64,000 nucleotides of DNA from IMGVR_UViG_3300024503_000015:1-64000; one strand, 5' to 3'. Counted from the stretch's first letter, positions 47,137 to 63,523 are shown. The notes: a model not told the origin generated them from the letters alone. Program-made: numbers and translations.

Positions 47137-47149
47137 ACTAAGTAAGTGC

Positions 47150-48721: not shown

Positions 48722-48723
48722 TC

Positions 48724-49377
48724 ATGTGGATGAATGACAAAATATTAATTATAGATAATTTTTACAAAGATCCTGACAAAATACGAAAGTTTGCTCTTAA
48801 TCAAGAATTTAAAAATTGTAAAGAAGCCAATGCAGGAGGCAACTGGCCTGGGCGAAGAACAAGTTTCTTACACAATCTTAATCAAGAATTGTCCGACGAA
48901 TTTCATAATGCGTTTCTTGGAAATTTATTAGAAAATAATCCTATAAAATACGGCGGATATATTGAAACAAATTTTCAACTGTGCTACGAATCCGATGGAG
49001 ATTCTTGGGTACACTACGACACGCCCACGTGGCATTGTACTCATGTTGGTGTTGTGTATTTGCATCCAAATCCTCCTGATAATTCAGGAACTTTGTTTTA
49101 CAAATTTAACGAAGAACACAGACAAGAGTTTGAAGAATATGCCGCACGTAATAATCATTTGTGGTTTAAATTAAATCGAGATCAGGACAGCAAAGAATTT
49201 CATAAATTTTTTAAACAGACAATGTCTATACCTAACGTATATAATCGTGCTATAATTTATGGACCAAATGCTTGGCACAAATCGGATAGGTATTTTGGTT
49301 CAACGCCTGAGACGGGTAGACTATTTCAACCATTTTTCTGTAACCTTAATTTTATATATGATGAACAAGAAACCTAA
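48724..49377 (+). CDS. 2OG-Fe(II) oxygenase-like (DUF6445-like)
   Basis: IIDNFYKDPD, WPGRR, HYD, YNRAI..WH. Confidence 0.75.
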   Translation: MWMNDKILIIDNFYKDPDKIRKFALNQEFKNCKEANAGGNWPGRRTSFLHNLNQELSDEFHNAFLGNLLENNPIKYGGYIETNFQLCYESDGDSWVHYDTPTWHCTHVGVVYLHPNPPDNSGTLFYKFNEEHRQEFEEYAARNNHLWFKLNRDQDSKEFHKFFKQTMSIPNVYNRAIIYGPNAWHKSDRYFGSTPETGRLFQPFFCNLNFIYDEQET

Positions 49378-50008
49378 ATTAGCCATATACGGGGATAGTT
49401 TTTCAGATCCGTCGTGGGTACAAAACGACTATTTGTCGTGGCCTGAGATGTTAGAACAGAAATACACTGTCAAAAATTATTCTCTTACAGGTTCTAGCAT
49501 GTGGTGGAGTTATGATAAATTTTTAGAAACTCACGCCAGTTACGATTTGGCAATATTTGTGGTAACAGTTCCGGGCAGAATTCATGTAGAATATAACAAT
49601 AAGCATTTGAATTTAAATCCTAGTACATGGCCAGTATGGGATGGCATTAACATTGGAGAAATGTATTTTAGGTACTTTTATTCCAGCAAACGAGAAACTG
49701 CGTTTCATAATTTTATGGTTAATGACATATTACAGTATCAGGATGTGTTAGTTGTCCCTGCATTTTTAGAAAGTTTGCCTAATTTAAATTCTTGGTCATT
49801 GTGCCACTATGCTGATTTAGAATTACAATTCTATGGTCTAGATCATCCAGGTAACAATGAAAACAGAAAATGTCATTTAACCAAAGAAAATAATCTTATG
49901 GTATACAACAAAATTATCAATGCTATTGATAATAAGGATCAAATTTTAAAATTAAATCCTGAAGATTTTGTGCAACCTGCGGATCCTATGGAATGTTATT
50001 GGAAATAA
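49358..50008 (+). CDS. SGNH/GDSL hydrolase-like protein
   Basis: IYGDSFS, SWP, terminal CHLTKENN; start moved to MMNKK. Confidence 0.65.
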   Translation: MMNKKPKLAIYGDSFSDPSWVQNDYLSWPEMLEQKYTVKNYSLTGSSMWWSYDKFLETHASYDLAIFVVTVPGRIHVEYNNKHLNLNPSTWPVWDGINIGEMYFRYFYSSKRETAFHNFMVNDILQYQDVLVVPAFLESLPNLNSWSLCHYADLELQFYGLDHPGNNENRKCHLTKENNLMVYNKIINAIDNKDQILKLNPEDFVQPADPMECYWK

Positions 50009-50009
50009 T

Positions 50010-50591
50010 ATGAAGGAAGATTACAAAGTTATCAAAGGATTTGCAGATGCAGATACTTGCAATCGTATGGTTGAAAAATTAGACGACTTTTATAAAAAAG
50101 GTTATAACTTGCCGCCGGATAATCAGTGTCCGTCTAGTCCTACTTTTTATGGAATTTTTAATGACGAATCAAAATTGTGGTTACCTAAAATAGAAGAACT
50201 AGTGGAAAAGAAGTTATTTCCAACATACACTTACTCAAGGATTTATACAAAAAATGAAGCGTTAAATCCACATATCGATAGGTTTGAGTGCGAATATAGT
50301 TTTACACTTACTTTAAAATACGATAAAAATATATGGCCCATTTATGTTCAGTCTGGCAATAGAGGGCATGAAATTTTATTAGACGTTGGAGATATCTTAA
50401 TTTATAAAGGTGTTAAAAATCTACACTGGCGGCATGCGTTAGAAAATGATTTTCACTATCAGGGGTTTTTCCATTATGTAGATAAGCAGGGTCCTTATTC
50501 TGATAGAAGATTTGACGGACGACATAGTTTTGCGTCCACACAAGAAGTAATAGACGAAGTAATTAGGAGAAGAAATGTATTACAACAGTGA
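50010..50591 (+). CDS. 2OG-Fe(II) oxygenase
   Basis: PTYTYSRIY, HIDR, HWR, FFHYV. Confidence 0.82.
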   Translation: MKEDYKVIKGFADADTCNRMVEKLDDFYKKGYNLPPDNQCPSSPTFYGIFNDESKLWLPKIEELVEKKLFPTYTYSRIYTKNEALNPHIDRFECEYSFTLTLKYDKNIWPIYVQSGNRGHEILLDVGDILIYKGVKNLHWRHALENDFHYQGFFHYVDKQGPYSDRRFDGRHSFASTQEVIDEVIRRRNVLQQ

Positions 50592-51174
50592 ATATCAATA
50601 CATGACATTTGATGTTCCGCATGTTGTTGAAAATATTGCAGACATTCAACGCATGACAGACATAGGTATTGATAAATTTAAAAGAAAATTTAATGCACGT
50701 AATTATGCTGTTGGCACAGACAACATTACCTGGCAGTTTGCTAACTATAATGTGTTTGGTCTTTGTTCTTGTAATCAATGGTTCTATGATATCTATACAA
50801 GTTTAATCGACGGAATTAGACAATATCACGAACTAGCGGGTATCGAAAAGCCAAAACAACTATGGTTGCAGGCTTGGATTAACAGTCATAAAAATGGACA
50901 GGTTCTTAAAACACATAATCATGATTGGCCTTTACACGGATTTATGGCTATAGATCCTAAGAAAAGTCATACTGTGTTTACAGATAAGCCTAACGGCAAA
51001 GAGTTGTACAGAGTTGAAAACAAAGTAGGACAGTTTTACATAGGCCCTGGTAGTAGATTTCATCATGTAGAAATTTTAGAACCGTACGAGGGTGAACGAA
51101 TTACATTTGGATTTGACTTAGAGCATCGAGATAGAATTTTTGATAACATGGGATTTATTCCAATTATTATATGA
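50575..51174 (+). CDS. 2OG-Fe(II)/cupin oxygenase-like protein
   Basis: AWIN..HNH..HHV..RITFGFD. Confidence 0.7.
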   Translation: MYYNSEYQYMTFDVPHVVENIADIQRMTDIGIDKFKRKFNARNYAVGTDNITWQFANYNVFGLCSCNQWFYDIYTSLIDGIRQYHELAGIEKPKQLWLQAWINSHKNGQVLKTHNHDWPLHGFMAIDPKKSHTVFTDKPNGKELYRVENKVGQFYIGPGSRFHHVEILEPYEGERITFGFDLEHRDRIFDNMGFIPIII

Positions 51175-51809
51175 GTTATTATCAAACATTTAATTCGTTT
51201 GGCTATATTATTGAAGACGTTCCTAAAGAAATTATGGACACTTTGTGGAAGGAAGTTAAAGAAATACAAAAAGACTTTGACCATGCTTCTGCTACTAACC
51301 ACACGTTGGCTGGTAATATTCAGAGAGAATATTCATTAAAAGACTCCATTTCGGTAGTAGAGCCATTTGCATTTAATGTAGCCGAAACTTATAACGAGCT
51401 GTTCAAATATAATTCTAATATCAGCGTGTTTAAACCAGGGCGATTAGATTTCGCTGTAGACACACTATGGGTTAATTTTCAGAAAAAATATGAATTCAAT
51501 CCAGCGCATACACATCTAGGTCTATATAGTTTTGTAATATACTTACAAATTCCATATGACCTCAATGAAGAGTTGGCTGCAAGTCCTGGGGTAAACTCTA
51601 ATAAAAATCTAGCATCAGCATTTGAATTTTTCTATGTAAATTCGTTTGGTAAAATAACTAAAAATCCTATATTCATGGATAAGACATGGGAAGGGAAAAT
51701 GTTGTTGTTTCCAGCAGAATGTATGCACGAAGTACACCCATTTTATACGTCCGACGATTACAGGATTTCCGTAGCAGGTAATATTGCTATCCAAGCCGGA
51801 TCTAAGTAA
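51171..51809 (+). CDS. 2OG-Fe(II) oxygenase
   Basis: WVNFQKKYEFNPAHTH, FPA..HEVHPF..RISVAGN. Confidence 0.85.
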   Translation: MSYYQTFNSFGYIIEDVPKEIMDTLWKEVKEIQKDFDHASATNHTLAGNIQREYSLKDSISVVEPFAFNVAETYNELFKYNSNISVFKPGRLDFAVDTLWVNFQKKYEFNPAHTHLGLYSFVIYLQIPYDLNEELAASPGVNSNKNLASAFEFFYVNSFGKITKNPIFMDKTWEGKMLLFPAECMHEVHPFYTSDDYRISVAGNIAIQAGSK

Positions 51810-51827
51810 ATCACAAAAATACCCCAC

Positions 51828-51833
51828 TAAATA
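51828..51833 (+). promoter_or_regulatory. late promoter box inside the oxygenase island
   Basis: CTAAATA then TAAGGAGA RBS before 51860. Confidence 0.5.
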
Positions 51834-51859
51834 TTGTCGAATTAAGGAGAATTACATAT

Positions 51860-52471
51860 ATGTCTAACAAATTACCAGAAATTTTTTATCTCGAAAACGT
51901 TGCAAAGCAAGATGTTTTTGCTAACATTATTGCAGATTTAAACGACGGAGTTTGGAAATACGGTGTTATAAAAATTAATGCCGCTGGCTTTGATATCGAA
52001 GATAACGCAAACTTTTGGTCTGTAGATATGGTTAAAAATCGTTGGACAGAAGTATTATTTCAGGATATTATTGACAAACTCGAAGCACTAGATCCTAGAG
52101 TCAAAGGTTATAACTTTAAAAGTCTTGACGTTGTTGCCGGCGGCAAAACATTTGGCCTAGACGGAAATATACACGTTGACAGAGAGTTTGAATTTAATTC
52201 AAACGGCGACGGTTATATGACAATGTGTTATTTTCCTAATAAAGAATGGAGCCCGGAATGGGGCGGTGAACTGCAATTTTTTGACAATCAAGGAAATATT
52301 ATAGCCAGTTATTATCCAATGCCTAATACTTGTATTGTATTTGACAGTAACATTCCTCACAGAGGCCTTGCTCCTAACAGAAATTGTACAGAATTAAGAA
52401 AATATATTTCTTTTAAGACGTTTGTTAATAAGTTTGATTTTAGTGGCGATATTGAAGCCGAAGTTAAATGA
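51860..52471 (+). CDS. 2OG-Fe(II) oxygenase (prolyl hydroxylase-like)
   Basis: HVD, WSPEWGGEL, FDSNIPHRG..R. Confidence 0.85.
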   Translation: MSNKLPEIFYLENVAKQDVFANIIADLNDGVWKYGVIKINAAGFDIEDNANFWSVDMVKNRWTEVLFQDIIDKLEALDPRVKGYNFKSLDVVAGGKTFGLDGNIHVDREFEFNSNGDGYMTMCYFPNKEWSPEWGGELQFFDNQGNIIASYYPMPNTCIVFDSNIPHRGLAPNRNCTELRKYISFKTFVNKFDFSGDIEAEVK

Positions 52472-53241
52472 TTCAAAATTTATTTGCGTTACCTATCTAC
52501 AAAACTAATATTTTTGACTCTGATATAGACTTTGGAGTCATAAGGTCTACGCTTGAACAACAATACAAGGAAATAAAATTTCATGTTGGGTTGGAAAAAA
52601 ATGGCGGTATAAGTACCTACGGCACTAATAGAAATTTGCATGAAGTACCAGAATTTAAAGCATTGTGCGATTTAATTTTGTATCATGCAAATTTATATTG
52701 GAAAGTCCTGGATATCAACGACGGTCTGCGCCCTGCAATAGACGAGTGCTGGTCTAATAAACACGTTAACGGTAGTTTTACTGACTGGCATTCTCATAGT
52801 ATGCACCCTATTGTTGTAAGTTTTTATCTAAGTGCTCCTGAACGTAGTGGAGGAATAGTGTTTACTAATCCTATGGAATACAGTATTACACACATTCCTT
52901 ACAATCGTCCTGTAGAAGAAAAAATTAATACCACAATTCATATTAAATCAGGCGATGTGTTAATGTTTCCTGGATGGTTGAGACATAAAACTGAAGTAAG
53001 TCACACTGATGATGAACGTATAGTAATCACATTTAATTTAAGATACAGCGGAGTATACTTAGATTCTCAACAACCATATCCGGTCGTTAAAGAAACTACA
53101 ATGCCTGATAATTTTTCAACTCCCGTAATAGTGGAATCGAATAACAGTACCATGGATTATTTGTTTAATAAGTTACATACTCAGGAAATTATTATAAATC
53201 AATTAAAAGCAATGCTCACTGGAGGCGCTGATGGAAGATAA
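52468..53241 (+). CDS. 2OG-Fe(II) oxygenase (TIGR02466-like) with C-terminal extension
   Basis: HSH, FPGWLRHKT..RIVITFN. Confidence 0.85.
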   Translation: MIQNLFALPIYKTNIFDSDIDFGVIRSTLEQQYKEIKFHVGLEKNGGISTYGTNRNLHEVPEFKALCDLILYHANLYWKVLDINDGLRPAIDECWSNKHVNGSFTDWHSHSMHPIVVSFYLSAPERSGGIVFTNPMEYSITHIPYNRPVEEKINTTIHIKSGDVLMFPGWLRHKTEVSHTDDERIVITFNLRYSGVYLDSQQPYPVVKETTMPDNFSTPVIVESNNSTMDYLFNKLHTQEIIINQLKAMLTGGADGR

Positions 53242-53497
53242 AAAAGTACCTCGTGTTATAAGAAACCTTGATACATCGCAACGTAGAGTTCACTTCAACG
53301 AAAAAATTTTACTAGTCCCAAGAGAAGTAGAACAAAAACGTTTAGAAATATGCAATAACTGTAAGTCGTATGAAAATTACGGCTGTACTATTACTGGATA
53401 TTTTATGCCCAAGACCGTAAGAAATAAATCACAAAGTTGTCCTTATGGTAAATGGACTAGTTGGTATAGTTTTAATGATAATTTTAAGGACGAATAA
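53231..53497 (+). CDS. small Cys-rich protein (DUF6171-like)
   Basis: RLEICNNC..GC..CPYGKW. Confidence 0.6.
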   Translation: MEDKKVPRVIRNLDTSQRRVHFNEKILLVPREVEQKRLEICNNCKSYENYGCTITGYFMPKTVRNKSQSCPYGKWTSWYSFNDNFKDE

Positions 53498-54258
53498 TGT
53501 CAGTTGTAAAAGTAGGATATACTCCATGGTTTGAAAAATCTCCAAATACTAGCGGACTGGGTCCGCTAAATTATTACGGCTGGAACGAAATTATTCATTT
53601 TGATTTAGAAAAGTTAGACACATGGAAAGATTCAAAAGTAGGATTTATGAAATGCCCTGCATTTGTAAAGTATAACGAACAAACATGGGTAATACGTTCT
53701 TTAATTGATGTAGAATTGCACTGGGACAAATATAATAAAGTTTTAAGCAGTAATCTTCCAAGTCTTGCACACGATGCTATGGTCAAAGTTCACTGGGGAG
53801 ATTTTAATCCTGAAGTTGATAAACCTATAGTTGCATTAAACAGCGCCATGCTGTTCTATGCAGACGAAGAAGTATGGGTAGACTTTTTACCTCCTTATAA
53901 TCATATCGATTTAAGATGGAGATTGATGCCTGGCAGTTTTAATATTTGTAATTGGCAACGTCCGCTGGTTCCTACTTTTGAAATGCTCAATGACAGAATT
54001 GAATTTAAGAGAGGACAGCCGTTAGCCTATGTAAGATTTAGAGCAAGAGACCCACAGGCAATGTTTCAATTAAACAAACAACCAAGAACAGAAGAACTCG
54101 ATCATATTGTAAATTCTTCTGTGTCTCTTAAATCATATCAAAACAATTTAAGTTGGAAAATTGTGTCGGGGGTCATTCCAAATAGATTACGTCCAAAGAA
54201 ATTAGTAAAATCAGAACCTTGGATTTGTAGATTCTTTAGAAGGATCTTAAAAAAATGA
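53497..54258 (+). CDS. hypothetical protein, possible dUTPase-like beta fold
   Basis: KCPA motif and FKRGQPLAYVRF; resembles 60260..60994. Confidence 0.55.
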   Translation: MSVVKVGYTPWFEKSPNTSGLGPLNYYGWNEIIHFDLEKLDTWKDSKVGFMKCPAFVKYNEQTWVIRSLIDVELHWDKYNKVLSSNLPSLAHDAMVKVHWGDFNPEVDKPIVALNSAMLFYADEEVWVDFLPPYNHIDLRWRLMPGSFNICNWQRPLVPTFEMLNDRIEFKRGQPLAYVRFRARDPQAMFQLNKQPRTEELDHIVNSSVSLKSYQNNLSWKIVSGVIPNRLRPKKLVKSEPWICRFFRRILKK

Positions 54259-55715
54259 TCAAGTCCGTTTGCATATTAGGTGGAGGTACTAGCGGACTAA
54301 TAACGGCACTAGTACTCAATAAGTGGTATCCTACCATGGATATTAAAATTATCGAGTCTCCCACTATAGGTATTGTCGGCGTCGGAGAAGGTAGTACAGA
54401 ACATTGGAAACAGTTTATTAATACTGTAGGGATTACTCTACAAGAATTAATGTTAGAAACTGGTGCTACTTTCAAAGCAGGTATTAGATTTGAAAATTGG
54501 AATGGTGACGGCACATTTTATATGCACGCTCTACATGCCGATTATACGCAACTAATGGGTAACGGGTTGCCAGGAGTAATGGTCAAATTAATTTCTGAAG
54601 ATCAGCCGCACTTATATCCAGATAATGTCATTAATTCCATACATTACTTTCCTATCGATGCCAGTGTAAATCAATATCATTTTGATACGTTTAAACTTAA
54701 TAAATTTTTACACAAGAAATGTATCGAACGCGGAGTAGTTGTTGTTGAAGATGATATAGACGACGTTGAAATTGACAGTCAAGGATACATTAGTTCTTTA
54801 ATTAACAAAGACGGTGTCAAATATACAGCAGATTTCTTTGTAGATTCTTCTGGGTTCAGAAGAGTCATTAGTTCTAAACTTGGCGCAAAGTGGAATGATT
54901 GTAAAGAATATTTACCCATGGACAGAGCGTTTGCTTTTCCTACACCCAGTGACGACGAGTTTCCAAGTTGGACCCTGAGTCGTGCATTATCCAGCGGATG
55001 GTCATGGAGAATACCAACGCAAGAACGCTATGGCAACGGTTACGTTTATTCCAGTGAATTTTTATCCGACGATCAAGCATTGTCTGAAATGCAACAGTAC
55101 TATAAAGATCCTATACAAGTAGGTAAAAGTTTTAAGTTTAGTGCAGGTTATGTTGATAAATTCTGGATTAAAAATTGTGTTGCAGTAGGTCTTGCTGGAA
55201 GTTTTGTTGAACCTCTCGAGGCTACTAGCATAGGAACTAGTATTCAACAGGCGTTTGCACTAGGATCAGCACTGGCATCTTGGACTAAAGGCAACGAAAA
55301 AATAGCGGACAAATATAATCAACAATTTGAAGCAGTTGCTAAAAACATTATTGACTTTGTACAGTTACATTACATCACTCAACGTAACGATACACCATTC
55401 TGGCGTAGTTGCAAAGATTTAAAGTTGACCGAGTTTAATAAAGATACACTGGAACACTTTAAAACAGTTGTGCCAAGTAGAGCATATTTTCCCAGTCACT
55501 GGGTGTTATTTACAGAACAGAACTGGTTACAAGTATTACACGGTTTAAAATTATTTGATATAGAAAAAATAAAACAAATATGGATGTCTCAGGATCCCTC
55601 TGTTATTACTGAAACAGATAAAATATACGACAATATATTATTATACCAACGCGATGCTCTTAAATTTAATCACAGAGGCGCAATTGAATTCTTAGCAAAA
55701 GAAGTGAAACGATGA
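54255..55715 (+). CDS. flavin-dependent (tryptophan) halogenase homologue 1
   Basis: GGGTSG, GVGEGS, ATFK (catalytic Lys), WSWRIP, FVEPLEATS. Confidence 0.92.
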   Translation: MIKSVCILGGGTSGLITALVLNKWYPTMDIKIIESPTIGIVGVGEGSTEHWKQFINTVGITLQELMLETGATFKAGIRFENWNGDGTFYMHALHADYTQLMGNGLPGVMVKLISEDQPHLYPDNVINSIHYFPIDASVNQYHFDTFKLNKFLHKKCIERGVVVVEDDIDDVEIDSQGYISSLINKDGVKYTADFFVDSSGFRRVISSKLGAKWNDCKEYLPMDRAFAFPTPSDDEFPSWTLSRALSSGWSWRIPTQERYGNGYVYSSEFLSDDQALSEMQQYYKDPIQVGKSFKFSAGYVDKFWIKNCVAVGLAGSFVEPLEATSIGTSIQQAFALGSALASWTKGNEKIADKYNQQFEAVAKNIIDFVQLHYITQRNDTPFWRSCKDLKLTEFNKDTLEHFKTVVPSRAYFPSHWVLFTEQNWLQVLHGLKLFDIEKIKQIWMSQDPSVITETDKIYDNILLYQRDALKFNHRGAIEFLAKEVKR

Positions 55716-57211
55716 AAACCATCGCAATATTAGGCGGAGGAAGTGCTGGCTGGTTAACTGCTTTGTTTGTTAAACAAGTGTGGCCTGCCTGCGATGTGAC
55801 AGTAATAGAAGACCCTAATACTCCACCTATTATTGCTGGAGAAAGTGGTTCCGCATCCCTTAATAAACTATTCAACTTTTTAGAAATTCCGTTTGATGAC
55901 TGGATAGTGTCTGTAAATGCCATGCCTAAACTCGGCGGCAAATTTGTAAATTGGAACGGAATAGGAACAGAGTTTGTTCATGGGCTTATACCAGACTGGT
56001 ATAGATTAGACTTTAATGCTAAGTTTCCAGAGTTTGGATTGGGTAATGATTTTTTAGCCTGTTCATTGGCGGAAGGCATACCTACTGAAAAAATATTCTA
56101 CAACGGATCGTTACAGCGTGTGAATAAATTGCCTATCAGTCCTAGTAGTGTAGGTAAATTTAATGTTATTACACTACCTATGTGGCACTTCGACAGCCGC
56201 GCCAATGCCGACTATATGAAACGTCGCGGCATAAGCAAGGGGATTAAACTAATCGAAGGCAAGTATATTAAATCTAATAAAGCACTCAACGGTGACATTG
56301 ATTCTATTACATTAGATACTAGGGATCAAATAAATGCAGATTGGTTTTTTGATTGCTCCGGATTCGCCAGACTACTTCTACAAAAAGAATTAAATGAACC
56401 TTTTAAGGATTTAAGCGAATATTTTCCTGCTAGGGCAGTTGTAGCATGGTGGAACGAGCCTGTACTTAAAAATTATACCGAAATGACAGCATTGAAAAAT
56501 GGATGGTCTTGGAATATTAATTTAAAACATAGGGCAGGTAATGGATACATTTACGACCCCGACAGAATTACTGCGGATCAGGCAATAGACGAAGCAGAAA
56601 AATATTTTAATATAAAGATAGATCCGGTGGCTAATTTAAAATTTACACCTGGGTTGTTTTTAAATTCTTGGAAAAATAATGTAATTGCCGTTGGAATTAG
56701 TTCGGGATTTTTAGAGCCGTTGGAGTCGAACGGACTAGCATCTGTTGCTGAACAATTAAAAATATTGTCAGAATTTTGGTCTCCCGACAGTAATACCGTG
56801 TATGAACAAAAATCATTTAATGACAAATATCAAAAAATAATGTTTGATATCAGCGATTTCCTTTCACTACATTATCGAGGACACAGAAATGATTCCGATT
56901 TTTGGCAGGATCATAACTCTAATCCACAGCGTATATCGGCGTCATTACAGCATAAATTAGATCTATGGAAATCTGGATCATTAGGTATCGACAATACAGA
57001 AGTATATGCTTTAGAAAATTATGCAGTTGTTATCCAAGGACTGGATTTAATCAATAAAGACAAACTTAGACAACGTCTATTATCCAAACGGTCAACTATA
57101 TTTGAAGACTTTCACCAATCATACCAAAAATTATCTAACGATGTTGACAACATAACATCAATCTGCTATACTTTAGAAGAATGGGTAAAATTGGTTTATG
57201 AAAACAATTAA
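55712..57211 (+). CDS. flavin-dependent halogenase homologue 2 (divergent)
   Basis: GGGSAG, AMPK, WSWNIN, FLEPLESNG. Confidence 0.88.
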   Translation: MKTIAILGGGSAGWLTALFVKQVWPACDVTVIEDPNTPPIIAGESGSASLNKLFNFLEIPFDDWIVSVNAMPKLGGKFVNWNGIGTEFVHGLIPDWYRLDFNAKFPEFGLGNDFLACSLAEGIPTEKIFYNGSLQRVNKLPISPSSVGKFNVITLPMWHFDSRANADYMKRRGISKGIKLIEGKYIKSNKALNGDIDSITLDTRDQINADWFFDCSGFARLLLQKELNEPFKDLSEYFPARAVVAWWNEPVLKNYTEMTALKNGWSWNINLKHRAGNGYIYDPDRITADQAIDEAEKYFNIKIDPVANLKFTPGLFLNSWKNNVIAVGISSGFLEPLESNGLASVAEQLKILSEFWSPDSNTVYEQKSFNDKYQKIMFDISDFLSLHYRGHRNDSDFWQDHNSNPQRISASLQHKLDLWKSGSLGIDNTEVYALENYAVVIQGLDLINKDKLRQRLLSKRSTIFEDFHQSYQKLSNDVDNITSICYTLEEWVKLVYENN

Positions 57212-58694
57212 AAGTATAATAGTATTAGGTGGCGGCACCAGCGGATTAATTACTGCCTTGATGTTAAAAAGGCAACATGAACATTTAGATATTAAAGTTA
57301 TCGAAAGTTCTTCCGTTGGAGTTATAGGTGTAGGGGAAGGCGCTACAGAACATTGGAGATACTTCTGCGAAACTATAGGTGTTAGGTTAGAAGATACGCT
57401 GGTTGCCTGCGATGCTACTCTTAAAACAGGAATAAAATTTAGTAATTGGGGTGTGCCTGATTACTGGCATGCTACCTGTGAACCTTATGCAAGACCCGCT
57501 GGAGATTATCTAGCAGTTTACGCTAAATTAATTGCAGAAGGTGCTGGTCCTTTAGACATTATTCAAAAACGTACAATCGATAGCACAGTACCCGAAGATT
57601 GGGTAAATCTTAATGTTCCTTGCCCTGTTAATCAATTTCATTTCAATACATTTTCCACCAACGACTACTTACATAAGTTGTGTAAAGAAAGAAACATTCC
57701 TACAATAGATGATAAAATTGTAGATGTAATCTTAGACGACAACGGATATGTTAAAGAACTAATTGGAGAAAATGCCGTACACTCGGCAGATTTCTTTGTT
57801 GACTGTTCTGGTTTTGCCAAAGTGATAATGAAAAAACTTGGAGCAAAGTGGGAAAGTTATAAAGATAATCTTTGGGTTAATAGTGCTATTGCATTTCCTA
57901 CAGAAGATACAGACGAATATCCAATTTACACCAGCGCAACCGGTATGGATTATGGTTGGATGTGGAATACTCCCGTACATGGTCGATGGGGCAACGGCTA
58001 TGTGTTCAGTGACAAGTACATAGATTTCGACCAGGCGCAGGCAGAAGTCGAAGCAAAGTTAGGTAGAAAAATAAACATAGCAAAGAAAATCAAGTTTGAT
58101 GCAGGTAAACTTGACCGCACTTGGATTAAAAACTGCGCTAGTATCGGCTTATGTTCTAGTTTTGTAGAGCCACTAGAAAGTAGTGCCATTAGTCAAACTA
58201 TTTTGCAGACTTTTTTAATTATGAATTTATTGCCTAGTTGGACCAACAGTCCAGACGAAGTGGCCGGAATATACAATAAACGAGTAGACGACATCTGCGA
58301 AAATATTTTAGATTTTATTGCAGTACATTACTACGTACCCAGAGAAGATACAGCATTCTGGAAGGATCTTAAAAATAACAGAGACACCTGGGTACCTAAA
58401 AGATTAAAAGATAATTTAGAAAAGTGGAGCAAACGACTGCCATTGGTATTAGAATTTGATCAAAAGTATGTACTGTTTACTGCTGATAATTGGATAGTTA
58501 CATTACACGGATTAAATCTCTTAAATCCAGAACGTGTCAAACATGAATATATGATGCTGACTCCGGAAATTAGACAGCATTGTGATAGGATTGTCGACGA
58601 ACAAAAACATTTAGAAAATACATTACCTCATATTCCACATAAAGTAGGTCTTGAAAAATTTATAGGTAATTATAATAAAGCCTTAGGAAAATAA
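57198..58694 (+). CDS. flavin-dependent halogenase homologue 3
   Basis: GGGTSG, GVGEGA, ATLK, WMWNTP, FVEPLESSA. Confidence 0.92.
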   Translation: MKTIKSIIVLGGGTSGLITALMLKRQHEHLDIKVIESSSVGVIGVGEGATEHWRYFCETIGVRLEDTLVACDATLKTGIKFSNWGVPDYWHATCEPYARPAGDYLAVYAKLIAEGAGPLDIIQKRTIDSTVPEDWVNLNVPCPVNQFHFNTFSTNDYLHKLCKERNIPTIDDKIVDVILDDNGYVKELIGENAVHSADFFVDCSGFAKVIMKKLGAKWESYKDNLWVNSAIAFPTEDTDEYPIYTSATGMDYGWMWNTPVHGRWGNGYVFSDKYIDFDQAQAEVEAKLGRKINIAKKIKFDAGKLDRTWIKNCASIGLCSSFVEPLESSAISQTILQTFLIMNLLPSWTNSPDEVAGIYNKRVDDICENILDFIAVHYYVPREDTAFWKDLKNNRDTWVPKRLKDNLEKWSKRLPLVLEFDQKYVLFTADNWIVTLHGLNLLNPERVKHEYMMLTPEIRQHCDRIVDEQKHLENTLPHIPHKVGLEKFIGNYNKALGK

Positions 58695-58695
58695 A

Positions 58696-60267
58696 ATGTC
58701 AAAAATCAATAGCATAGTTGTAGTCGGAGGTGGTAGCGCCGGTTGGATGACTGCCGCAACTCTTATAAAATTCTTTCCAGAAAAAACTATCTCTTTAATT
58801 GAAAGTGCAGATGTTCCTACTGTAGGGGTGGGCGAAAGCACATTAGGTCAAATTAATGAATGGCTACACATACTTGATATTAAAGAAGACGATTTTATGA
58901 AATACACAGATGCTGGTCTTAAGATGAGCATCAAATTCACAGACTGGGCAGGCAAAGGATCTGGTGGATTTCATTATCCTTTCGGAGACTCCTGGAATGT
59001 GGGAACAGTATTCGGTGTAAACGACTGGTTTATTAAAAAGGCCAAGTATCCTGGAACTCCAAATACAGATTTTGCAGAGTGTTTCTTTCCCGCTATGCAG
59101 TTAGTTAATCAAAATAAAATTATTAAAAATGAAAATGATGAGCTACCTGGTTGGCGCTACGACAGCGATGTGGCTTATCACTTTGATGCTACTAAGTTTG
59201 GTATGTGGCTACGTGAAGAATATTGTAAGCCCCGAGGAGTTCAGCATATTGTAGGCACTATCAAAGAAGATATCGAAACTGATAGCGCAGGTGTTAAGTG
59301 TGTTGAGCTAACTACAGGTGAAAAAATCACAGCAGATTTATACATCGACTGCACAGGTTGGAAAAGTCTACTACTAGGAAAAGCACTAGGTGTGCCATTC
59401 GAGAGTTATTCAGACATACTACCCAATAACAGCGCATGGGCAACTAGAATGCCTTATACAGACAAAGAAAGTCAGTTGGAACCTTACACTAACTGTACTG
59501 CTATTGAACACGGCTGGGTGTGGAATATTCCCTTATGGTCTAGAATTGGTACTGGTTATGTATTCAGTGATGCTTATGTATCCAACGAAGATGCGTTAGA
59601 AGAATTTAAACGTTACTTGAAGGAAAATAATCCTGCAGATTTAATCGACACATTAGAATTTAAATTAATTAAAATGCGTGTAGGTATTCACGAAGAACTC
59701 TTCCATAAAAATGTTTGTGCTATTGGACTAAGTGCAGGATTCATAGAACCATTAGAGTCTAATGGCTTGTTCACCGTACACGAATTTTTGCATAGATTAG
59801 TTAAAACTTTATCTCGCGATGATATAAGTTTAATTGATAAAGTTGGATTTAACGAAGCAAATCGAGGAGACTTCAGAGCGTTTGCAGAGTTTGTAAGTAT
59901 GCACTACTTATTAAGCCAACGCAGTGACACTCAATATTGGAGAGATGCTAGAGAGCGTAAATTTAATAATGGAAAAAGAATTCCAGGTGACTTTTTAGGG
60001 TATGGATTTGATAATGCCATCTTTAAAAGAGATGTTCAATCAATGTACGACTCAAGTACAGGTGGCGCACTTTTCATTGCCGCTGGATTAAATTATTTCC
60101 CTATTACAGAATCAGTTATCAAACGATCAGAATTTAAATTTAATAGACGGTTAGATTATGTTAATGATTCATTTGATATTTGGGAGTCAAATAAAACTTA
60201 TTGGAAAAAGATTGCAGATGCCGCTCCTACTTTATATCAGTTCTTAAAAGACAAGTATAATGTTTAA
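58696..60267 (+). CDS. flavin-dependent halogenase homologue 4
   Basis: GGGSAG, GVGEST, AGLK, WVWNIP, FIEPLESNG. Confidence 0.93.
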   Translation: MSKINSIVVVGGGSAGWMTAATLIKFFPEKTISLIESADVPTVGVGESTLGQINEWLHILDIKEDDFMKYTDAGLKMSIKFTDWAGKGSGGFHYPFGDSWNVGTVFGVNDWFIKKAKYPGTPNTDFAECFFPAMQLVNQNKIIKNENDELPGWRYDSDVAYHFDATKFGMWLREEYCKPRGVQHIVGTIKEDIETDSAGVKCVELTTGEKITADLYIDCTGWKSLLLGKALGVPFESYSDILPNNSAWATRMPYTDKESQLEPYTNCTAIEHGWVWNIPLWSRIGTGYVFSDAYVSNEDALEEFKRYLKENNPADLIDTLEFKLIKMRVGIHEELFHKNVCAIGLSAGFIEPLESNGLFTVHEFLHRLVKTLSRDDISLIDKVGFNEANRGDFRAFAEFVSMHYLLSQRSDTQYWRDARERKFNNGKRIPGDFLGYGFDNAIFKRDVQSMYDSSTGGALFIAAGLNYFPITESVIKRSEFKFNRRLDYVNDSFDIWESNKTYWKKIADAAPTLYQFLKDKYNV

Positions 60268-60994
60268 AAAGAAACAAGAACCGATTATTACATTTACTTG
60301 TAGAGAGTGGGCTATAAGGACTCACGCTCCTGTGTTGCCTGCTGGAAACTTTTTGCCTAAAGAATATGAAGAATTGCATCCTGGAAACATTTGTCCGTTT
60401 GATCATTTTAATTCTGCATCGTTGTTAAGTGTAAGATTATGTCCTGCGGTAAACAATTATTTGCAGGCAGGGTATGTTATTCCGGCATGGTGCGATATTG
60501 AAATAAAATTTCAAAACGACCAATATCATGTAAACTACAGTAATTTAAACTATCAACATAGAACACATCCTGAAGAACAGTTTGGTGAGATGTTTAATAG
60601 ATTTAAATTTAGAACAGATATTAAAATTGACAATCCGTGGAGTATCTATACAGCACCTGGGTATAGTTTAATGTGGATGCCTATGTGGTTTCATAATGCA
60701 AATTATCAAGCAGTACCTGCTATTGTAGATTCTGACAGAGTGCCAAATCATAATCCAATTAATATCATGTTGTTCGAACCCAAGGACACATTAATTAAAA
60801 TGGGCGATCCGTTAGTTCAAGTTATTCCATTTAAGAAGGAAACTATTACCGCCGTTAGCAGAGAATATAACGAATCTGATGCTAAAAGAAAAGACTCCTT
60901 GTTGGGACTAGGACAGTTAAGCAGATATGGCTGGAGACAATTTATAAAAAATAAAGTTAATTATCTATTAGATAGGAAAGATTTAGACTTATGA
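60260..60994 (+). CDS. hypothetical protein, possible dUTPase-like beta fold
   Basis: LCPAV..GYVIPAWCD, NPW..TAPGYS, IKMGDPLVQVIPF. Confidence 0.6.
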   Translation: MFKKKQEPIITFTCREWAIRTHAPVLPAGNFLPKEYEELHPGNICPFDHFNSASLLSVRLCPAVNNYLQAGYVIPAWCDIEIKFQNDQYHVNYSNLNYQHRTHPEEQFGEMFNRFKFRTDIKIDNPWSIYTAPGYSLMWMPMWFHNANYQAVPAIVDSDRVPNHNPINIMLFEPKDTLIKMGDPLVQVIPFKKETITAVSREYNESDAKRKDSLLGLGQLSRYGWRQFIKNKVNYLLDRKDLDL

Positions 60995-61629
60995 TTGGTA
61001 GTGCTAAGTCCAAAGAATTTTTTAAATTTCAAGATTCTTTAAAACCTCAGATATCATTCGATGATATTATAGTTATTGACGACGTGATTAATCACATGTA
61101 TCAAGATGATCTTGAAAAAACACTATTAAGCGAAATGAGTATTCCTTGGTTTTTATTGGACGACATTACATACTCTAATACTAGAAAAGTTAAAAAACAA
61201 AATCTTGGACTAGTGCATCCTATAGTGCCAACATTTAATGGCATGAGTCCTGTGTATAATTTATTATTACCGCTGTTATATGAAGCATTGACAAAAATTG
61301 ATTTTAAATTGTCGAATATAATTCAAGCCAGATCTTTTTTACAATTTCCCACAGAACAAACCAGCATTAATAATCCGCACGTTGATGACAACATACCGCA
61401 CATAGTTTGTCTTTATTATGTCAATGACAGCGATGGCGATACAATAATATATGATCAAACCACAGATATTGTGCCCAATGTTCCTGGCATTAATGAAGAA
61501 GTGTTTACTATCAAACAACGAGTAACTCCCAAAAAAGGACGAGTAGTATTGTTTAACGGAAAACATTATCATAGCAGTAGTACTCCTACACAAGGAAGAC
61601 GTTGTATTATAAATTTTGATGTGGAATAA
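60991..61629 (+). CDS. 2OG-Fe(II) oxygenase
   Basis: PHVD, LYYVNDSDGDT, PKKGRVVLFNG..HSSS..R. Confidence 0.87.
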   Translation: MIGSAKSKEFFKFQDSLKPQISFDDIIVIDDVINHMYQDDLEKTLLSEMSIPWFLLDDITYSNTRKVKKQNLGLVHPIVPTFNGMSPVYNLLLPLLYEALTKIDFKLSNIIQARSFLQFPTEQTSINNPHVDDNIPHIVCLYYVNDSDGDTIIYDQTTDIVPNVPGINEEVFTIKQRVTPKKGRVVLFNGKHYHSSSTPTQGRRCIINFDVE

Positions 61630-61630
61630 A

Positions 61631-62305
61631 ATGATAGATATAAATGAAATTTTAGTATTAGATGATGTTATCTGTCCGCAGTATCAGGATATGATAGAAA
61701 ATTGGTTATTATCTCCGTCTAGTACTTGGCAGTTTTCTCGAGATGTTGCATTAGCAGACAACGTGATTGACAAACTAGATTTAAAAACTAAACCTGGTTT
61801 TGCAAAATCGTTTTATAGTGTAAGAACTGGATCTACTAGTGATTTGTATCCTATGATTTTACCTATGGTGTTTGAATCTTTTCATAAGGCAAATCTGCCA
61901 TTTGATAATGTATTGTTTTCAAGAAGTTTTTTAACATTTCCTGTGCCTGGATGCGGTCCTAACGACTTTGATCATATTCATGTAGACACTCCTGAAGATC
62001 ATATGGTGTGTTTATATTATGCCAGCGACAGCGATGGCGGCGATACTGTATTTTTTGATAAAACAGTAAAGGATATTTTAGAAACGCAGGAAATAAAGGC
62101 CCAATTAGAGGGCAAAGATCTAACATTTTATGATCAAACTATTCTGGAATTGATCGATAGTCAAGTTGATAAGACTAATTTTAGTGTTATTAAAAGAGTA
62201 ACTCCAAAAAAGGGAAGGGTAGCAATATTCAACGGTGCAAGGTATCATAGTGCGGCTAGATGCAATAGCGGTCACCGTTTAGTTGTTAATACGTGTGTAA
62301 GATGA
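61631..62305 (+). CDS. 2OG-Fe(II) oxygenase (paralog of the preceding gene)
   Basis: HVD, LYYASDSDGGDT, PKKGRVAIFNG..HSA..R. Confidence 0.87.
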   Translation: MIDINEILVLDDVICPQYQDMIENWLLSPSSTWQFSRDVALADNVIDKLDLKTKPGFAKSFYSVRTGSTSDLYPMILPMVFESFHKANLPFDNVLFSRSFLTFPVPGCGPNDFDHIHVDTPEDHMVCLYYASDSDGGDTVFFDKTVKDILETQEIKAQLEGKDLTFYDQTILELIDSQVDKTNFSVIKRVTPKKGRVAIFNGARYHSAARCNSGHRLVVNTCVR

Positions 62306-62877
62306 TAATATCAGTTGGTGCTATTCCTGTAGGAATATTTGAATGGAAAGAATTTACCGATCACAAAGATGCGATTGTTGATCTATGCCTTAGAGAAGAA
62401 AAACCTAATGTCATAGAATCTAATATTGCACCTAAGGTTAAAACAAACTTATGGGAATCTAATTTTAGTTTCTTACAGCAACATTCAGAGTTAAAAGCTC
62501 TTGATACTTGGTTAAACAGTACTACTAGAGACTTTGTTAATGCTGTAAACAAATCGGATTATCATATAGCAATTACAGAAAGTTGGGCACACGTTACTCG
62601 TCCATTGGGTCAGCATGAACCACATAGACACCCAGACTCTACCTGGAGTGGTATATTTTATATAGATGCCGATGAGCCGCAGAGCGGAAATAATATATGG
62701 TTTAATATGTTTAAGTTGCCCGAACGTCCCGGGCTAGAATTTTTTGATGAAAATTTCTCTGCAGAATTTATTCCTGGACGCTTAATAATATTCCCAAGTA
62801 TAATGTTGCATTATGCAAAACCATACTTGGGAAAAGATAGAAGAATATTAATTGCGTTTAATAGTGTCTGTGTTTAA
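62302..62877 (+). CDS. 2OG-Fe(II) oxygenase (TIGR02466-like)
   Basis: ESW..HRH..WSGIFY..FPS..LH..R. Confidence 0.85.
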   Translation: MIISVGAIPVGIFEWKEFTDHKDAIVDLCLREEKPNVIESNIAPKVKTNLWESNFSFLQQHSELKALDTWLNSTTRDFVNAVNKSDYHIAITESWAHVTRPLGQHEPHRHPDSTWSGIFYIDADEPQSGNNIWFNMFKLPERPGLEFFDENFSAEFIPGRLIIFPSIMLHYAKPYLGKDRRILIAFNSVCV

Positions 62878-63515: not shown

Positions 63516-63523
63516 AATAATCC

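What the first reader, a model, noticed from the sequence alone, without database searches (positions are those of the whole stretch)
54255..60267. Four tandem halogenase paralogs with systematically diverged signature motifs
Seen: all four keep GxGxxG and the PrnA K79-equivalent Lys (ATFK, AMPK, ATLK, AGLK). They differ at WxWxIP (WSWRIP, WSWNIN, WMWNTP, WVWNIP) and at the FxxPxxSxG loop (FVEPLEATS, FLEPLESNG, FVEPLESSA, FIEPLESNG). Only #4 is fully canonical, and #2 also has IAGESGS in place of GVGE. Known: WxWxIP is associated with separating halogenases from monooxygenases, and the EPLESTG loop contributes to halide binding. Inference: the paralogs have split by halide, substrate or chemistry, and some may hydroxylate rather than halogenate.
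Basis: partly seen in the sequence, partly recalled or inferred. Interest (0 to 1): 0.7.

Follow-up and report, generated by a model that had tools for sequence, protein, structure and literature searches.

The report
Four ancient halogenase paralogs, jumbo phage
A giant virus of river bacteria carries four side-by-side flavin-dependent halogenase genes that are old, separately conserved lineages rather than fresh copies or decaying genes. They sit inside a block of oxygenase genes of a kind already described in marine cyanophages, and what they halogenate is still unknown.

Summary

They are not recent duplicates. They share 26-41% identity, and each belongs to its own well-supported orthogroup. 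The same H1-H2-H3-H4 array is kept in at least five diverged relatives.

Each paralog's odd motif is fixed across its orthogroup:
- H1: EPLEA[ST]S in 118/118
- H2: IIAGES and WSWNIN
- H3: WMWNTP and EPLES[ST]A
- H4: canonical, VirX1-like

Selection is purifying: 45 synonymous against 9 non-synonymous codon changes in H1, H3 and H4 versus a near-identical strain. Fixed differences between the H1 and H3 families concentrate in the two signature loops (p 5e-4).

All four keep the catalytic Lys and Glu and both Trp residues, so hydroxylase chemistry is not indicated. None has the free-tryptophan binding motifs.

The host virus is a riverine jumbo myovirus, not a cyanophage. The genes lie in a roughly 15 kb island of Fe/2OG oxygenases, bracketed by two dUTPase-fold Cys proteins. 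This matches the Syn9-type island described in 2010.

One new point: H2 alone has been swapped as a precise cassette (64-75% nucleotide identity against 97-100% in the flanks) between near-clonal strains.

The parts
54255..55715 (+). H1: flavin-dependent halogenase, 486 aa. WSWRIP; loop FVEPLEATS. Belongs to the P-SSM2 PrnA-like phage superclade.
   Evidence: PF04820 E 2e-104. Orthogroup of 118 sequences, all with GVGEGST and EPLEA[ST]S. Nearest isolates S-SCSM2R 44% and P-SSM2 41%.
55712..57211 (+). H2: flavin-dependent halogenase, 499 aa. IIAGES in place of GVGE; WSWNIN. Member of a clade seen only on viral and metagenomic contigs.
   Evidence: PF04820 E 2e-87. Family of 120 clusters at 43% identity or more keeps IIAGES and WSWNIN. 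AF2 pLDDT 95.9, TM 0.82-0.88 to RebH/PrnA/Thal/LooH. Best match in 185,579 species genomes is 32%.
57198..58694 (+). H3: flavin-dependent halogenase, 498 aa. WMWNTP; loop FVEPLESSA. Sister lineage of H1.
   Evidence: PF04820 E 1e-90. Orthogroup of 49: GWMWNTP in 44, EPLES[ST]A in 46. Sister to the H1 clade, SH-aLRT 92.
58696..60267 (+). H4: VirX1-like flavin-dependent halogenase, 523 aa, fully canonical motifs.
   Evidence: PF04820 E 4e-105. Best solved relative is VirX1 (6qgm), E 9e-104, aligned 1-520 to 1-525. Clade with Sf-CH11 gp94 and Syn9 gp41/gp42, SH-aLRT 100. Motifs conserved in the 7 relatives checked, except that Syn9 gp41 reads WVWNVP.
55704..57190 (+). Segment replaced as a cassette between near-identical strains. 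It covers the last four codons of H1 and all of H2 up to 8 nt before the H3 start.
   Evidence: Window versus L014: 97-100% nt identity in nearly all 200-nt bins of the flanks, but 64-75% across H2. 421 mismatches in H2 against 19, 13 and 25 in H1, H3 and H4; breakpoints read from the alignment.
53497..54258 (+). o253: distant member of the dUTPase-fold conserved-Cys family (DUF6065-like), directly upstream of H1.
   Evidence: Profile built from the o244 family hits it at E 5e-23. phrog_7084/phrog_17480. Shares the CPA motif.
60260..60994 (+). o244: dUTPase-fold protein with an invariant Cys, homologue of Syn9 gp43, directly downstream of H4.
   Evidence: BLASTP to Syn9 gp43 E 8e-16. C61 invariant in 81 sequences. 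AF2 pLDDT 91.6. Foldseek top 50 PDB hits are all dUTPases, prob 1.0, E about 1e-4.
47584..53241 (+). Upstream block of about nine tandem ORFs, mostly Fe(II)/2OG oxygenase-superfamily (PF13640, PF13759, DUF6445, a 'ferrochelatase'-labelled PHROG).
   Evidence: Pfam, PHROGs, HxD motifs.
60991..62877 (+). Downstream block of three Fe(II)/2OG oxygenase-like ORFs.
   Evidence: Pfam PF13640 (both hits just under the curated cut-off) and PF13759.
53231..53497 (+). o88: small Cys-rich protein (DUF6171-like), conserved in the island of relatives.
   Evidence: PF19668 E 8e-5, below cut-off. phrog_13558. Orthologues in L014-L020.
45706..47584 (+). Anchor genes of the insertion site: T4 gp15-like tail sheath stabiliser, then a NUDIX hydrolase.
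   Evidence: PF16724 E 6e-22 and PF00293 E 5e-15. The same gp15-NUDIX pair occurs in PA5oct-like jumbo phages without the island, and with an island in L025.

Best explanation
The four genes are functional flavin-dependent halogenases (FDHs) from four old, separately maintained lineages. H4 is VirX1-like. H1 and H3 are sister lineages related to the P-SSM2-type cyanophage 'PrnA'. H2 belongs to a clade seen only on viral and metagenomic contigs. They form the core of a conserved, co-directional island of about 15 kb, inserted after the gp15-NUDIX genes of a riverine jumbo myovirus. The rest of the island is a dozen or so Fe/2OG oxygenase-type genes, two dUTPase-fold proteins with a conserved Cys that bracket the halogenases, and a small Cys-rich protein. 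Shown here: family membership, retention of the catalytic Lys and Glu and the FAD motif, orthogroup-wide fixation of each paralog's motif variant, purifying selection, conservation of the array across phage species, and presence in RNA libraries. Inferred mechanism: during infection each enzyme uses host-made FADH2 (no phage flavin reductase was found), O2 and halide to form hypohalous acid at the flavin. The conserved Lys then delivers it to an electron-rich aromatic substrate. The substrate is not free tryptophan, because the Trp-binding motifs are absent. Because the fixed differences sit in the two loops at the flavin/halide site, the paralogs most likely differ in halide handling or reactivity as well as in target position. 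They would act as successive tailoring steps alongside the oxygenases on one or a few shared substrates, either a peptide- or amino-acid-derived metabolite or a protein. H2 is additionally an exchangeable module: homologous recombination has replaced it, gene-precisely, between otherwise near-clonal strains.
For: Family and catalytic residues. H2 fold. Four starred orthogroups; H1+H3 sister; H4 with Syn9 gp41/gp42 and Sf-CH11. Array conserved in L012, L015/16, L017, L018 (contig ends in the third halogenase) and L020; three of the four in L013. Motif fixation. Purifying selection: omega 0.00-0.09; 45 synonymous against 9 non-synonymous codon changes in H1, H3 and H4, p 4e-17 against a neutral 72%. 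Fixed H1/H3 differences concentrated in the signature loops. No Trp1 or Trp4 motifs: with motif definitions from PMC8269204. No flavin reductase (PF01613) in 270 kb. Island content and dUTPase-fold partners. H2 cassette swap. RNA libraries from four river samples hold all four genes at 100% identity. Prior description of the Syn9 island and its predicted role in peptide or metabolite tailoring: PMC2938197. VirX1 activity: PMC8407142.
Against: No activity, substrate or halide has been measured for any of the four or for any member of the H1, H2 or H3 orthogroups. H1 (Ser to Ala, Gly to Ser) and H3 (Gly to Ala) depart from the Fx.Px.Sx.G motif that reviews say is present in all active FDHs, either as written or with G replaced by a charged residue. 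H2 alters the GVGE flavin-contact motif. The virus record is only about 71% complete, so a flavin reductase or a substrate gene could lie elsewhere. Presence in RNA libraries does not prove transcription, because carry-over DNA was not controlled. The cassette swap rests on one strain pair; the variant arrangement was seen on two contigs. No precursor peptide, NRPS or carrier gene was identified in the island.
Confidence: 0.72

Rival explanations
1. One reading: the paralogs diverged here by halide, substrate or chemistry, and those with non-canonical WxWxIP (H2, H3) act as flavin monooxygenases (hydroxylases) rather than halogenases.
For: WxWxIP is proposed to keep substrate away from the flavin and so prevent mono-oxygenation (PMC8407142). 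H2 has N for P and H3 has T for I. These changes are fixed in their families.
Against: Both Trp residues are kept. So are the Lys (PrnA K79) and Glu (PrnA E346) needed for halogenation, which are invariant or nearly so in 104 aligned sequences. Active FDHs without a canonical WxWxIP are known. The island already holds about a dozen dedicated oxygenases. The divergence predates this phage.
Confidence: 0.1
2. Recent tandem duplication in this phage followed by relaxed selection, leaving several copies redundant or decaying.
For: Tandem, same-strand, abutting genes of one family.
Against: Pairwise identity is only 26-41%. Each copy has orthologues at 60-77% in the same array order in other phages. 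All are intact and omega is 0.1 or less. Catalytic residues are conserved across hundreds of orthologues.
Confidence: 0.02
3. The island modifies the virion rather than a metabolite. The halogenases and oxygenases would halogenate and hydroxylate aromatic or other residues of tail-fibre, Gly-rich or other structural proteins encoded next to it, and H2 allele swapping would track changes in the structural target or host range.
For: The island lies between gp15 and Gly_rich_2 structural genes and next to a 1901-aa Mtd_N fibre protein. Phage halogenases in Syn9, Sf-CH11 and HTVC008M also sit beside fibre or neck genes. Iyer et al. proposed hydroxylation of tail-collar and collagen-like proteins by linked dioxygenases in other neighbourhoods. 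VirX1 has a large open active site that accepts bulky substrates.
Against: These positions are also known hypervariable hot spots of T4-like genomes, so adjacency may be positional. No halogenated phage protein has been reported. The T4 late-promoter motif is not enriched near the island.
Confidence: 0.12
4. The island acts on nucleotides or DNA. The dUTPase-fold proteins and NUDIX enzyme would bind or process (deoxy)nucleotides that the halogenases and oxygenases modify, giving a new base hypermodification.
For: Two dUTPase-fold proteins bracket the halogenases. A NUDIX gene lies at the island's edge. 2OG oxygenases include nucleic-acid modifiers.
Against: The gp15-NUDIX pair exists in PA5oct-like phages without the island. 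The dUTPase-fold family has 10-19% identity to real dUTPases and instead has a single invariant Cys. FDHs are known to act on electron-rich arenes, not nucleobases.
Confidence: 0.04

Closest known systems
VirX1, the flavin-dependent halogenase of cyanophage Syn10 (PDB 6qgm), and its Syn9 orthologue gp42
   Same: H4 aligns over its full length (E 9e-104; 38% identity by tblastn to the Syn10 and Syn9 genes) and shares GVGESTLG, WVWNIP and FIEPLES.G. It falls in the same 100%-supported clade. As with Syn9 gp42 and gp43, it is followed by a dUTPase-fold Cys protein.
   Different: Only H4 is of this type. The host virus is a riverine jumbo myovirus with PA5oct-like gp15, not a marine Kyanoviridae cyanophage. 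Iodide preference is untested.
The Syn9-type cyanophage island of tandem dioxygenases plus tryptophan-halogenase-like genes (Iyer, Abhiman, de Souza & Aravind 2010, PMC2938197)
   Same: Many distantly related 2OG dioxygenases in tandem, FDHs with intact Rossmann fold and Lys, and the dUTPase-fold conserved-Cys protein, all on one strand next to structural genes.
   Different: Four FDHs from four orthogroups instead of two closely placed ones. Two dUTPase-fold genes bracket them. No JmjC/MINA-type member was detected by Pfam in this window, although one is present in the relative L025. The genomic site (after gp15-NUDIX) and the phage group are different.
BrvH-type ('group C') FDHs that lack the tryptophan-binding module and halogenate indole rather than tryptophan (PDB 6frl; PMC8269204)
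   Same: H1-H3 are short (486-499 aa) and lack the Trp1 and Trp4 motifs. H1 shares the Gly-to-Ser change at the end of the EPLES.. loop. BrvH is among the best solved matches of H1 (E 4e-62).
   Different: 24-30% identity only. H1 also has Ala for the loop Ser. H2 and H3 carry motif variants not seen in BrvH.
Proteobacterial Trp-halogenase homologues linked to TonB receptors and SapC (Alteromonadales, Sphingomonadales, Cellvibrionales)
   Same: These are the nearest cellular relatives of H2, at 26-32% identity over almost the full length, with the GGG.AGW and EPLE[SA]NG patterns. They are also co-located with dioxygenases according to PMC2938197.
   Different: No cellular genome among 185,579 species holds an H2-orthogroup member (43% identity or more). 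The viral clade has its own IIAGES and WSWNIN signature.

Membership tests
Flavin-dependent halogenase (Pfam PF04820 Trp_halogenase) | Profile match above the curated cut-off over most of the domain | tested here: met
   All four: 294-353 bits against a cut-off of 21. 30 or more solved FDHs matched at E 1e-34 to 1e-104.
Flavin-dependent halogenase (Pfam PF04820 Trp_halogenase) | N-terminal GxGxxG dinucleotide-binding motif | tested here: met
   GGGTSG, GGGSAG, GGGTSG, GGGSAG. Invariant in the alignments.
Flavin-dependent halogenase (Pfam PF04820 Trp_halogenase) | Catalytic Lys (PrnA K79) and Glu (PrnA E346) | tested here: met
   H1 K74 aligns with PrnA K79, and the EPLE loop with PrnA EPLES. 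Lys is invariant in the four and in 104 sequences. Glu is at least 90% conserved.
Flavin-dependent halogenase (Pfam PF04820 Trp_halogenase) | WxWxIP motif | tested here: inconclusive
   H1 and H4 are canonical. H2 reads WSWNIN and H3 reads WMWNTP. Both Trp residues are kept in all four. The motif is not obligatory in active FDHs (PMC8407142).
Flavin-dependent halogenase (Pfam PF04820 Trp_halogenase) | Fx.Px.Sx.G motif lining the tunnel | tested here: inconclusive
   H2 and H4 are canonical. H1 reads F.EP.EATS and H3 reads F.EP.ESSA. The G-to-S change is also in solved BrvH. The variants are fixed in their orthogroups.
Flavin-dependent halogenase (Pfam PF04820 Trp_halogenase) | Two-module FDH fold | tested here: met
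   Tested for H2 only: AF2 pLDDT 95.9, Foldseek TM 0.82-0.88 to LooH, RebH, PrnA, Thal and PyrH.
Flavin-dependent halogenase (Pfam PF04820 Trp_halogenase) | FADH2-, O2- and halide-dependent halogenation of a substrate | not testable with these tools
   Needs enzyme assays.
Free-L-tryptophan halogenases (PrnA, RebH, Thal, PyrH type) | Trp1 (AT[IVF][PS]..) and Trp4 (YY..F[ED].EF.NFW / [YH]YHG..) substrate-binding motifs, as defined in PMC8269204 | tested here: not met
   No match in any of the four. HMMER alignments of H1 to PrnA stop at PrnA residue 433, before Trp4.
VirX1-like viral FDH clade (H4 only) | Full-length similarity to VirX1, including the C-terminal module, and the same clade in a tree | tested here: met
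   E 9e-104, residues 1-520 against 1-525. Clade support SH-aLRT 100. H1-H3 match VirX1 far less well (E 1e-42 to 1e-48).
VirX1-like viral FDH clade (H4 only) | Preference for iodide and broad substrate scope | not testable with these tools
   Biochemical property (PMC8407142).
Syn9-type phage dioxygenase-halogenase island (PMC2938197) | Tandem array of several distantly related 2OG-Fe(II) dioxygenases on one strand | tested here: met
   PF13640, PF13759 and DUF6445 hits in at least 11 ORFs between 47584 and 62877, a few below the curated cut-off.
Syn9-type phage dioxygenase-halogenase island (PMC2938197) | dUTPase-fold protein with a conserved cysteine next to the halogenases | tested here: met
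   o244 is homologous to Syn9 gp43, has an invariant Cys and a dUTPase fold. A second copy, o253, is present.
Syn9-type phage dioxygenase-halogenase island (PMC2938197) | A JOR/JmjC (MINA/No66-like) dioxygenase in the array | tested here: inconclusive
   No JmjC or Cupin_8 Pfam hit in the window's island at E 0.01 or better. JmjC_2 is present in the related island L025. Three ORFs have no Pfam hit.
   Lys, Glu and both Trp residues are present in all four.

The most novel reading that the evidence does not exclude
The island is a virus-borne, multi-step halogenation and hydroxylation pathway with no cellular counterpart. Four FDHs, whose halide-site loops have been fixed in different states for a long time, would install different halogens or act at different positions on one scaffold made or presented with the help of the dUTPase-fold Cys proteins. 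One of them (H2, a clade found only on viral and metagenomic contigs) would serve as a swappable specificity cassette, exchanged between co-circulating strains under diversifying, arms-race-type selection, for example to alter a halogenated virion component or an anti-competitor metabolite.
Probability: 0.15. Interest if true: 0.8.

Novelty: new variant of a known kind. Interest (0 to 1): 0.5.

Why it matters
Phage-encoded flavin halogenases are known. VirX1 was the first FDH found to prefer iodide, yet its natural substrate and the purpose of the surrounding oxygenase islands have stayed open since 2010.

This locus shows three things.
- Such islands are not confined to marine cyanophages. 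They also occur, enlarged, in freshwater jumbo myoviruses.
- At least three further viral FDH lineages, uncharacterised and carrying fixed changes exactly at the flavin/halide loops, have been kept side by side under purifying selection.
- One of them is exchanged as a unit between strains.

That yields a natural panel of four related enzymes, with hundreds of orthologues, for asking which loop residues set halide preference. It also gives a defined operon to express as a whole in search of the missing substrate. For biocatalysis, the H1, H2 and H3 families are new starting points with open, non-tryptophan active sites.

Tried and rejected
- **Megablast against phage isolates:** the 6 kb stretch gave no match. 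The window's own record may be masked.
- **Complex prediction, H4 with o244:** no verdict (score 0.00). This is not evidence for or against binding.
- **Promoter and terminator scans:** the T4 late-promoter motif TATAAATA occurs 3 times in 64 kb against 8.1 expected, so it is not enriched. Sigma-70-like sites number 86 against 75.5 +/- 8.2 expected, again no signal. Terminator-like sites are 18 against 10.3 +/- 3.2, and none is convincing between the four genes.
- **psbA (PF00124):** absent from the 270 kb record, so there is no support for a cyanobacterial host.
- **Flavin reductase (PF01613):** absent. The record is about 71% complete.
- **YN00 dN/dS:** failed for several genes with too few or saturated changes. 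I used NG86 and codon counts instead. dS for H2 (2.7) is saturated, so its omega of 0.07 is only indicative.
- **First attempt to fold o244:** I repeated it without that row.
- **VirX1 primary paper (PMC6875430):** not held. VirX1 properties are taken from the review PMC8407142.
- **RNA libraries:** contigs from four metatranscriptomes cover the genes at word depth 2-8. DNA carry-over was not controlled, so I do not claim transcription.
- **Mosaicism beyond H2:** H3 of the window is nearest to L017 (77%), whereas H1, H2 and H4 are about equally near L015, L017 and L020. This is suggestive only, and I did not test it formally.

Full report
**1. The observation**

The window has four abutting + strand ORFs at exactly the reported coordinates: H1 54255-55715, H2 55712-57211, H3 57198-58694 and H4 58696-60267. 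Start and stop codons overlap or are 1 nt apart, so the four are probably co-transcribed and perhaps translationally coupled.

Each is a near full-length match to Pfam PF04820 (Trp_halogenase), with E 1e-87 to 1e-105. Each also matches 30 or more solved flavin-dependent halogenases. They are the only four such genes in the 270 kb virus record that holds the window.

The HMMER alignment of H1 to PrnA places the conserved Lys on PrnA K79 and the EPLE loop on the PrnA loop that holds E346.

**2. What carries the genes**

The record is an IMG/VR virus contig, linear, with a CheckV completeness of 71%. It comes from riverine metagenomes, and at least 20 DNA runs hold the stretch completely.

The window also encodes:
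- a T4-type large terminase,
- a 1105-aa tail sheath,
- UvsX/RecA-like and DnaB-like proteins,
- a 1901-aa fibre protein with an Mtd_N domain.

Its gp15-like sheath stabiliser is nearest to PA5oct-like Pseudomonas jumbo phages and to a 469 kb Sinorhizobium phage (33-34% identity). In several of those records, as here, a MutT/NUDIX hydrolase is annotated at the same place as gp15. There is no psbA. This is therefore a freshwater jumbo myovirus of unknown host, not a cyanophage, although most isolate phages with similar halogenases are cyanophages.

**3. The four genes are old paralogs, not fresh duplicates**

Pairwise identity is 26-41%.

Searches of a 5.8-billion-protein collection gave each of H1, H2 and H3 its own long series of relatives at 43-77% identity.

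Fetching the DNA around H2 relatives showed the same arrangement in several diverged phages: L012, L015/L016, L017, L018 (whose contig ends in the third halogenase) and L020. That arrangement is gp15, NUDIX, oxygenases, o253, H1, H2, H3, H4, o244, oxygenases, then Gly-rich structural genes. Each position is 60-77% identical to its counterpart here. Some relatives have an extra oxygenase gene inserted between halogenases. L013 has H2, H1 and H4 only.

A maximum-likelihood tree of 67 sequences gives four clades with SH-aLRT 100, each holding one window gene and its positional counterparts.
- H1 and H3 are sisters (support 92) inside a group that also holds the P-SSM2 'PrnA'.
- H4 groups with Sf-CH11 gp94 and with Syn9 gp41 and gp42. 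Syn9 gp42 gives the same tblastn match as the halogenase gene of Syn10, the source phage of VirX1.
- H2 sits on a long stem of its own.
- The deepest joins are weak and are flagged as long-branch joins, so I make no claim about the order of origin.

Another jumbo-phage contig (L025) has the same gp13-gp15-NUDIX site with three tandem halogenases plus two more, a JmjC gene and many oxygenases. Four is therefore not the upper limit in nature. No isolate in the 50,697-record phage collection showed more than three matching places among the rows listed.

**4. The motif variants are lineage signatures under purifying selection**

| Orthogroup | Sequences | Fixed features |
|---|---|---|
| H1 | 118 | GVGEGST in all; W.W[RKQ]IP; EPLEA[ST]S in 117, EPLEASA in one |
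| H2 | 120 | I[IVL]AGES in about 117; W.WNIN in about 90; EPLE[AS]NG in all but 7 |
| H3 | 49 | GWMWNTP in 44; EPLES[ST]A in 46 |
| H4 | 8 | Canonical in all, except Syn9 gp41 (WVWNVP) |

P-SSM2 and HTVC008M share EPLEATS with H1, so that state is old.

Against a near-identical strain (L014), H1, H3 and H4 differ at 17, 13 and 24 codons. Of these 54 codons, 45 are synonymous. The binomial p is 4e-17 against a neutral 72% non-synonymous expectation, and NG86 omega is 0.09, 0.00 and 0.06.

The H1 and H3 families have 92 alignment columns that are at least 90% conserved in both. Eleven of these carry different residues, and seven of the eleven lie in the WxWxIP segment or the EPLExxx loop. That is 7 of 17 conserved columns in those segments, against 4 of 75 elsewhere (Fisher p 4.7e-4). 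The post-duplication, fixed divergence between these sister paralogs is therefore concentrated at the flavin/halide site.

**5. Chemistry**

All four keep the FAD motif, the Lys and Glu, and both Trp residues. The H2 model is confident (pLDDT 95.9) and superposes on RebH, PrnA, Thal, LooH, BrvH and VirX1 at TM 0.8-0.88.

Reviews state that WxWxIP is absent from some active FDHs. They also state that Fx.Px.Sx.G variants exist (PMC8407142). BrvH, a solved halogenase, has the same terminal Gly-to-Ser change as H1.

I therefore see no positive evidence for hydroxylase chemistry. I put that reading at about 0.1.

None of the four has the Trp1 or Trp4 tryptophan-binding motifs defined in PMC8269204. 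In this respect they resemble the 'group C' BrvH-like enzymes and VirX1, which do not take free tryptophan.

No flavin reductase domain was found in the 270 kb record. Reduced flavin presumably comes from the host. This is an inference, because the record is incomplete.

**6. The island**

From 47584 to 62877, every gene is on the + strand with minimal spacing.

Pfam and PHROGs identify at least 11 ORFs as members of the Fe(II)/2OG oxygenase superfamily (PF13640, PF13759, DUF6445, and the cyanophage 'ferrochelatase-domain' PHROG). A few of these hits fall below the curated cut-off.

The halogenase array is bracketed by two proteins of one family.
- o244 (60260-60994) is homologous to Syn9 gp43 (E 8e-16).
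- Its family has 1479 representatives at E 0.001 or better, and a single invariant Cys.
- It folds confidently (pLDDT 91.6).
- Its 50 best PDB matches are all dUTPases (prob 1.0, E about 1e-4, 10-19% identity).
- A profile of the family hits exactly two ORFs in the whole record, o253 and o244. It also hits the equivalent flanking genes in every related island, and in Syn9 and L025.

[quoted passage not shown] They proposed that this cluster makes amino-acid-derived halogenated, hydroxylated metabolites (PMC2938197).

The present locus is thus an enlarged relative of a described but functionally unsolved system, found at a different site and in a different phage group.

**7. An unexpected finding: H2 is swapped as a cassette**

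L014, a 33.6 kb contig from an NCBI metagenome assembly, is colinear with window 45712-64000. Nucleotide identity is 97-100% in nearly all 200-nt bins.

The exception runs from 55704 to 57190, where identity falls to 64-75%. That span has 421 mismatches, against 19, 13 and 25 in H1, H3 and H4. The amino-acid identity of H2 there is 74%, and dS is saturated.

The breakpoints lie within about 10 nt of the H2 start and stop. The two alleles are the same length, have no indels, and keep every motif. In the tree they are each other's nearest relatives. The donor was therefore an unsampled phage lineage whose H2 is closer to the window's than that of any sampled relative.

The variant arrangement was seen on two contigs, but I could not check it at read level.

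The simplest reading is homologous replacement of one gene between co-circulating phages. This suggests that H2 specificity is under diversifying pressure at the population level while each allele remains under purifying selection.

No member of the H2 orthogroup turned up in one genome each of 185,579 bacterial and archaeal species. The best match there was 32% identity, from TonB/SapC-type proteobacterial homologues.

**8. Expression**

Contigs from four riverine metatranscriptome libraries cover all four genes at 100% identity and low depth. DNA carry-over was not controlled, so this is compatible with transcription but does not prove it.

**9. Verdict**

The divergence is systematic, selected and focused on the signature loops, which fits specialisation by halide or reactivity. 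It is partly wrong as well. The divergence is ancient and orthogroup-wide rather than a split within this phage, and there is no evidence for a switch to hydroxylation.

The system is a new variant of a known kind (VirX1-like and Syn9-type phage halogenase/dioxygenase islands). Three features are worth following:
- three uncharacterised viral FDH lineages with fixed changes in the halide-site loops,
- their occurrence in freshwater jumbo myoviruses,
- the gene-precise exchange of H2.

The substrate remains unknown. I favour a small aromatic or peptide-derived metabolite tailored stepwise with the oxygenases. Virion-protein modification is the main rival, and nucleotide modification is a long shot.

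Noticed in passing
window 38046-43751 (- strand): A 1901-aa protein whose first 43 residues match the Mtd_N domain (major tropism determinant N-terminus, E 6e-17) and tail-fibre PHROGs. It is transcribed divergently from the block that holds the island. I did not look for a diversity-generating retroelement.
   Followed up: no
L025 (ENA contig of 239 kb), 1-21557: Another jumbo-phage contig with the same gp13-gp15-NUDIX site. It carries three tandem halogenases plus two more on the other strand, a JmjC_2 gene, two dUTPase-fold Cys proteins and about ten 2OG oxygenases, so it has at least five halogenases in one island.
   Followed up: partly
window 57144-57172 (+): The best sigma-70-like site of the region (TTGACA, 17 nt, TATACT, with an extended -10 TG; 11 of 12). 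It lies inside the 3' end of H2, 26 nt upstream of the H3 start, within the swapped cassette. Promoter-like sites as a whole are not enriched, so it may be chance.
   Followed up: no
window 49968-50591 (+): This ORF matches the cyanophage PHROG labelled 'ferrochelatase' (E 9e-39). It has an HxD...H pattern like its 2OG-oxygenase neighbours and no Pfam ferrochelatase hit, so the label is probably a legacy misnomer.
   Followed up: partly
window 49259-50008 (+): The mechanical ORF overlaps the preceding gene by 119 nt. The gene called at the same place in L014 is 216 aa, so the true start is probably an internal ATG. There is no family hit, and the sequence resembles an SGNH/GDSL-type N-terminus (GDSF) by eye only.
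   Followed up: no
window 30706-34023 (- strand): An unusually long (1105 aa) tail sheath protein, in which only the C-terminal 100 residues match Phage_sheath_1C. This is consistent with a jumbo myovirus.
   Followed up: no
window 57198-58694 versus L017 11493-12998: H3 of the window is clearly closest to L017 (77%, against 67-72% to L015 and L020). H1, H2 and H4 are about equally distant from L015, L017 and L020. This hints at gene-wise mosaicism in the array beyond the H2 swap.
   Followed up: partly
L022 (P-SSM2), L023 (HTVC008M), L024 (Sf-CH11), L021 (Syn9): In isolate phages the halogenase genes also sit beside tail-fibre, neck or terminase genes and next to 2OG oxygenases. The association is recurrent, but it could reflect shared hypervariable insertion sites rather than function.
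   Followed up: partly
H2 family alignment: Seven of the 120 H2-family clusters have GWSFDVS in place of GWSWNIN, and seven have EPLGSPG in place of EPLE[SA]NG; I did not check that they are the same clusters. They have lost the second Trp and the catalytic Glu. This subgroup, unlike the window's genes, may really have changed chemistry or lost halogenase activity.
   Followed up: no
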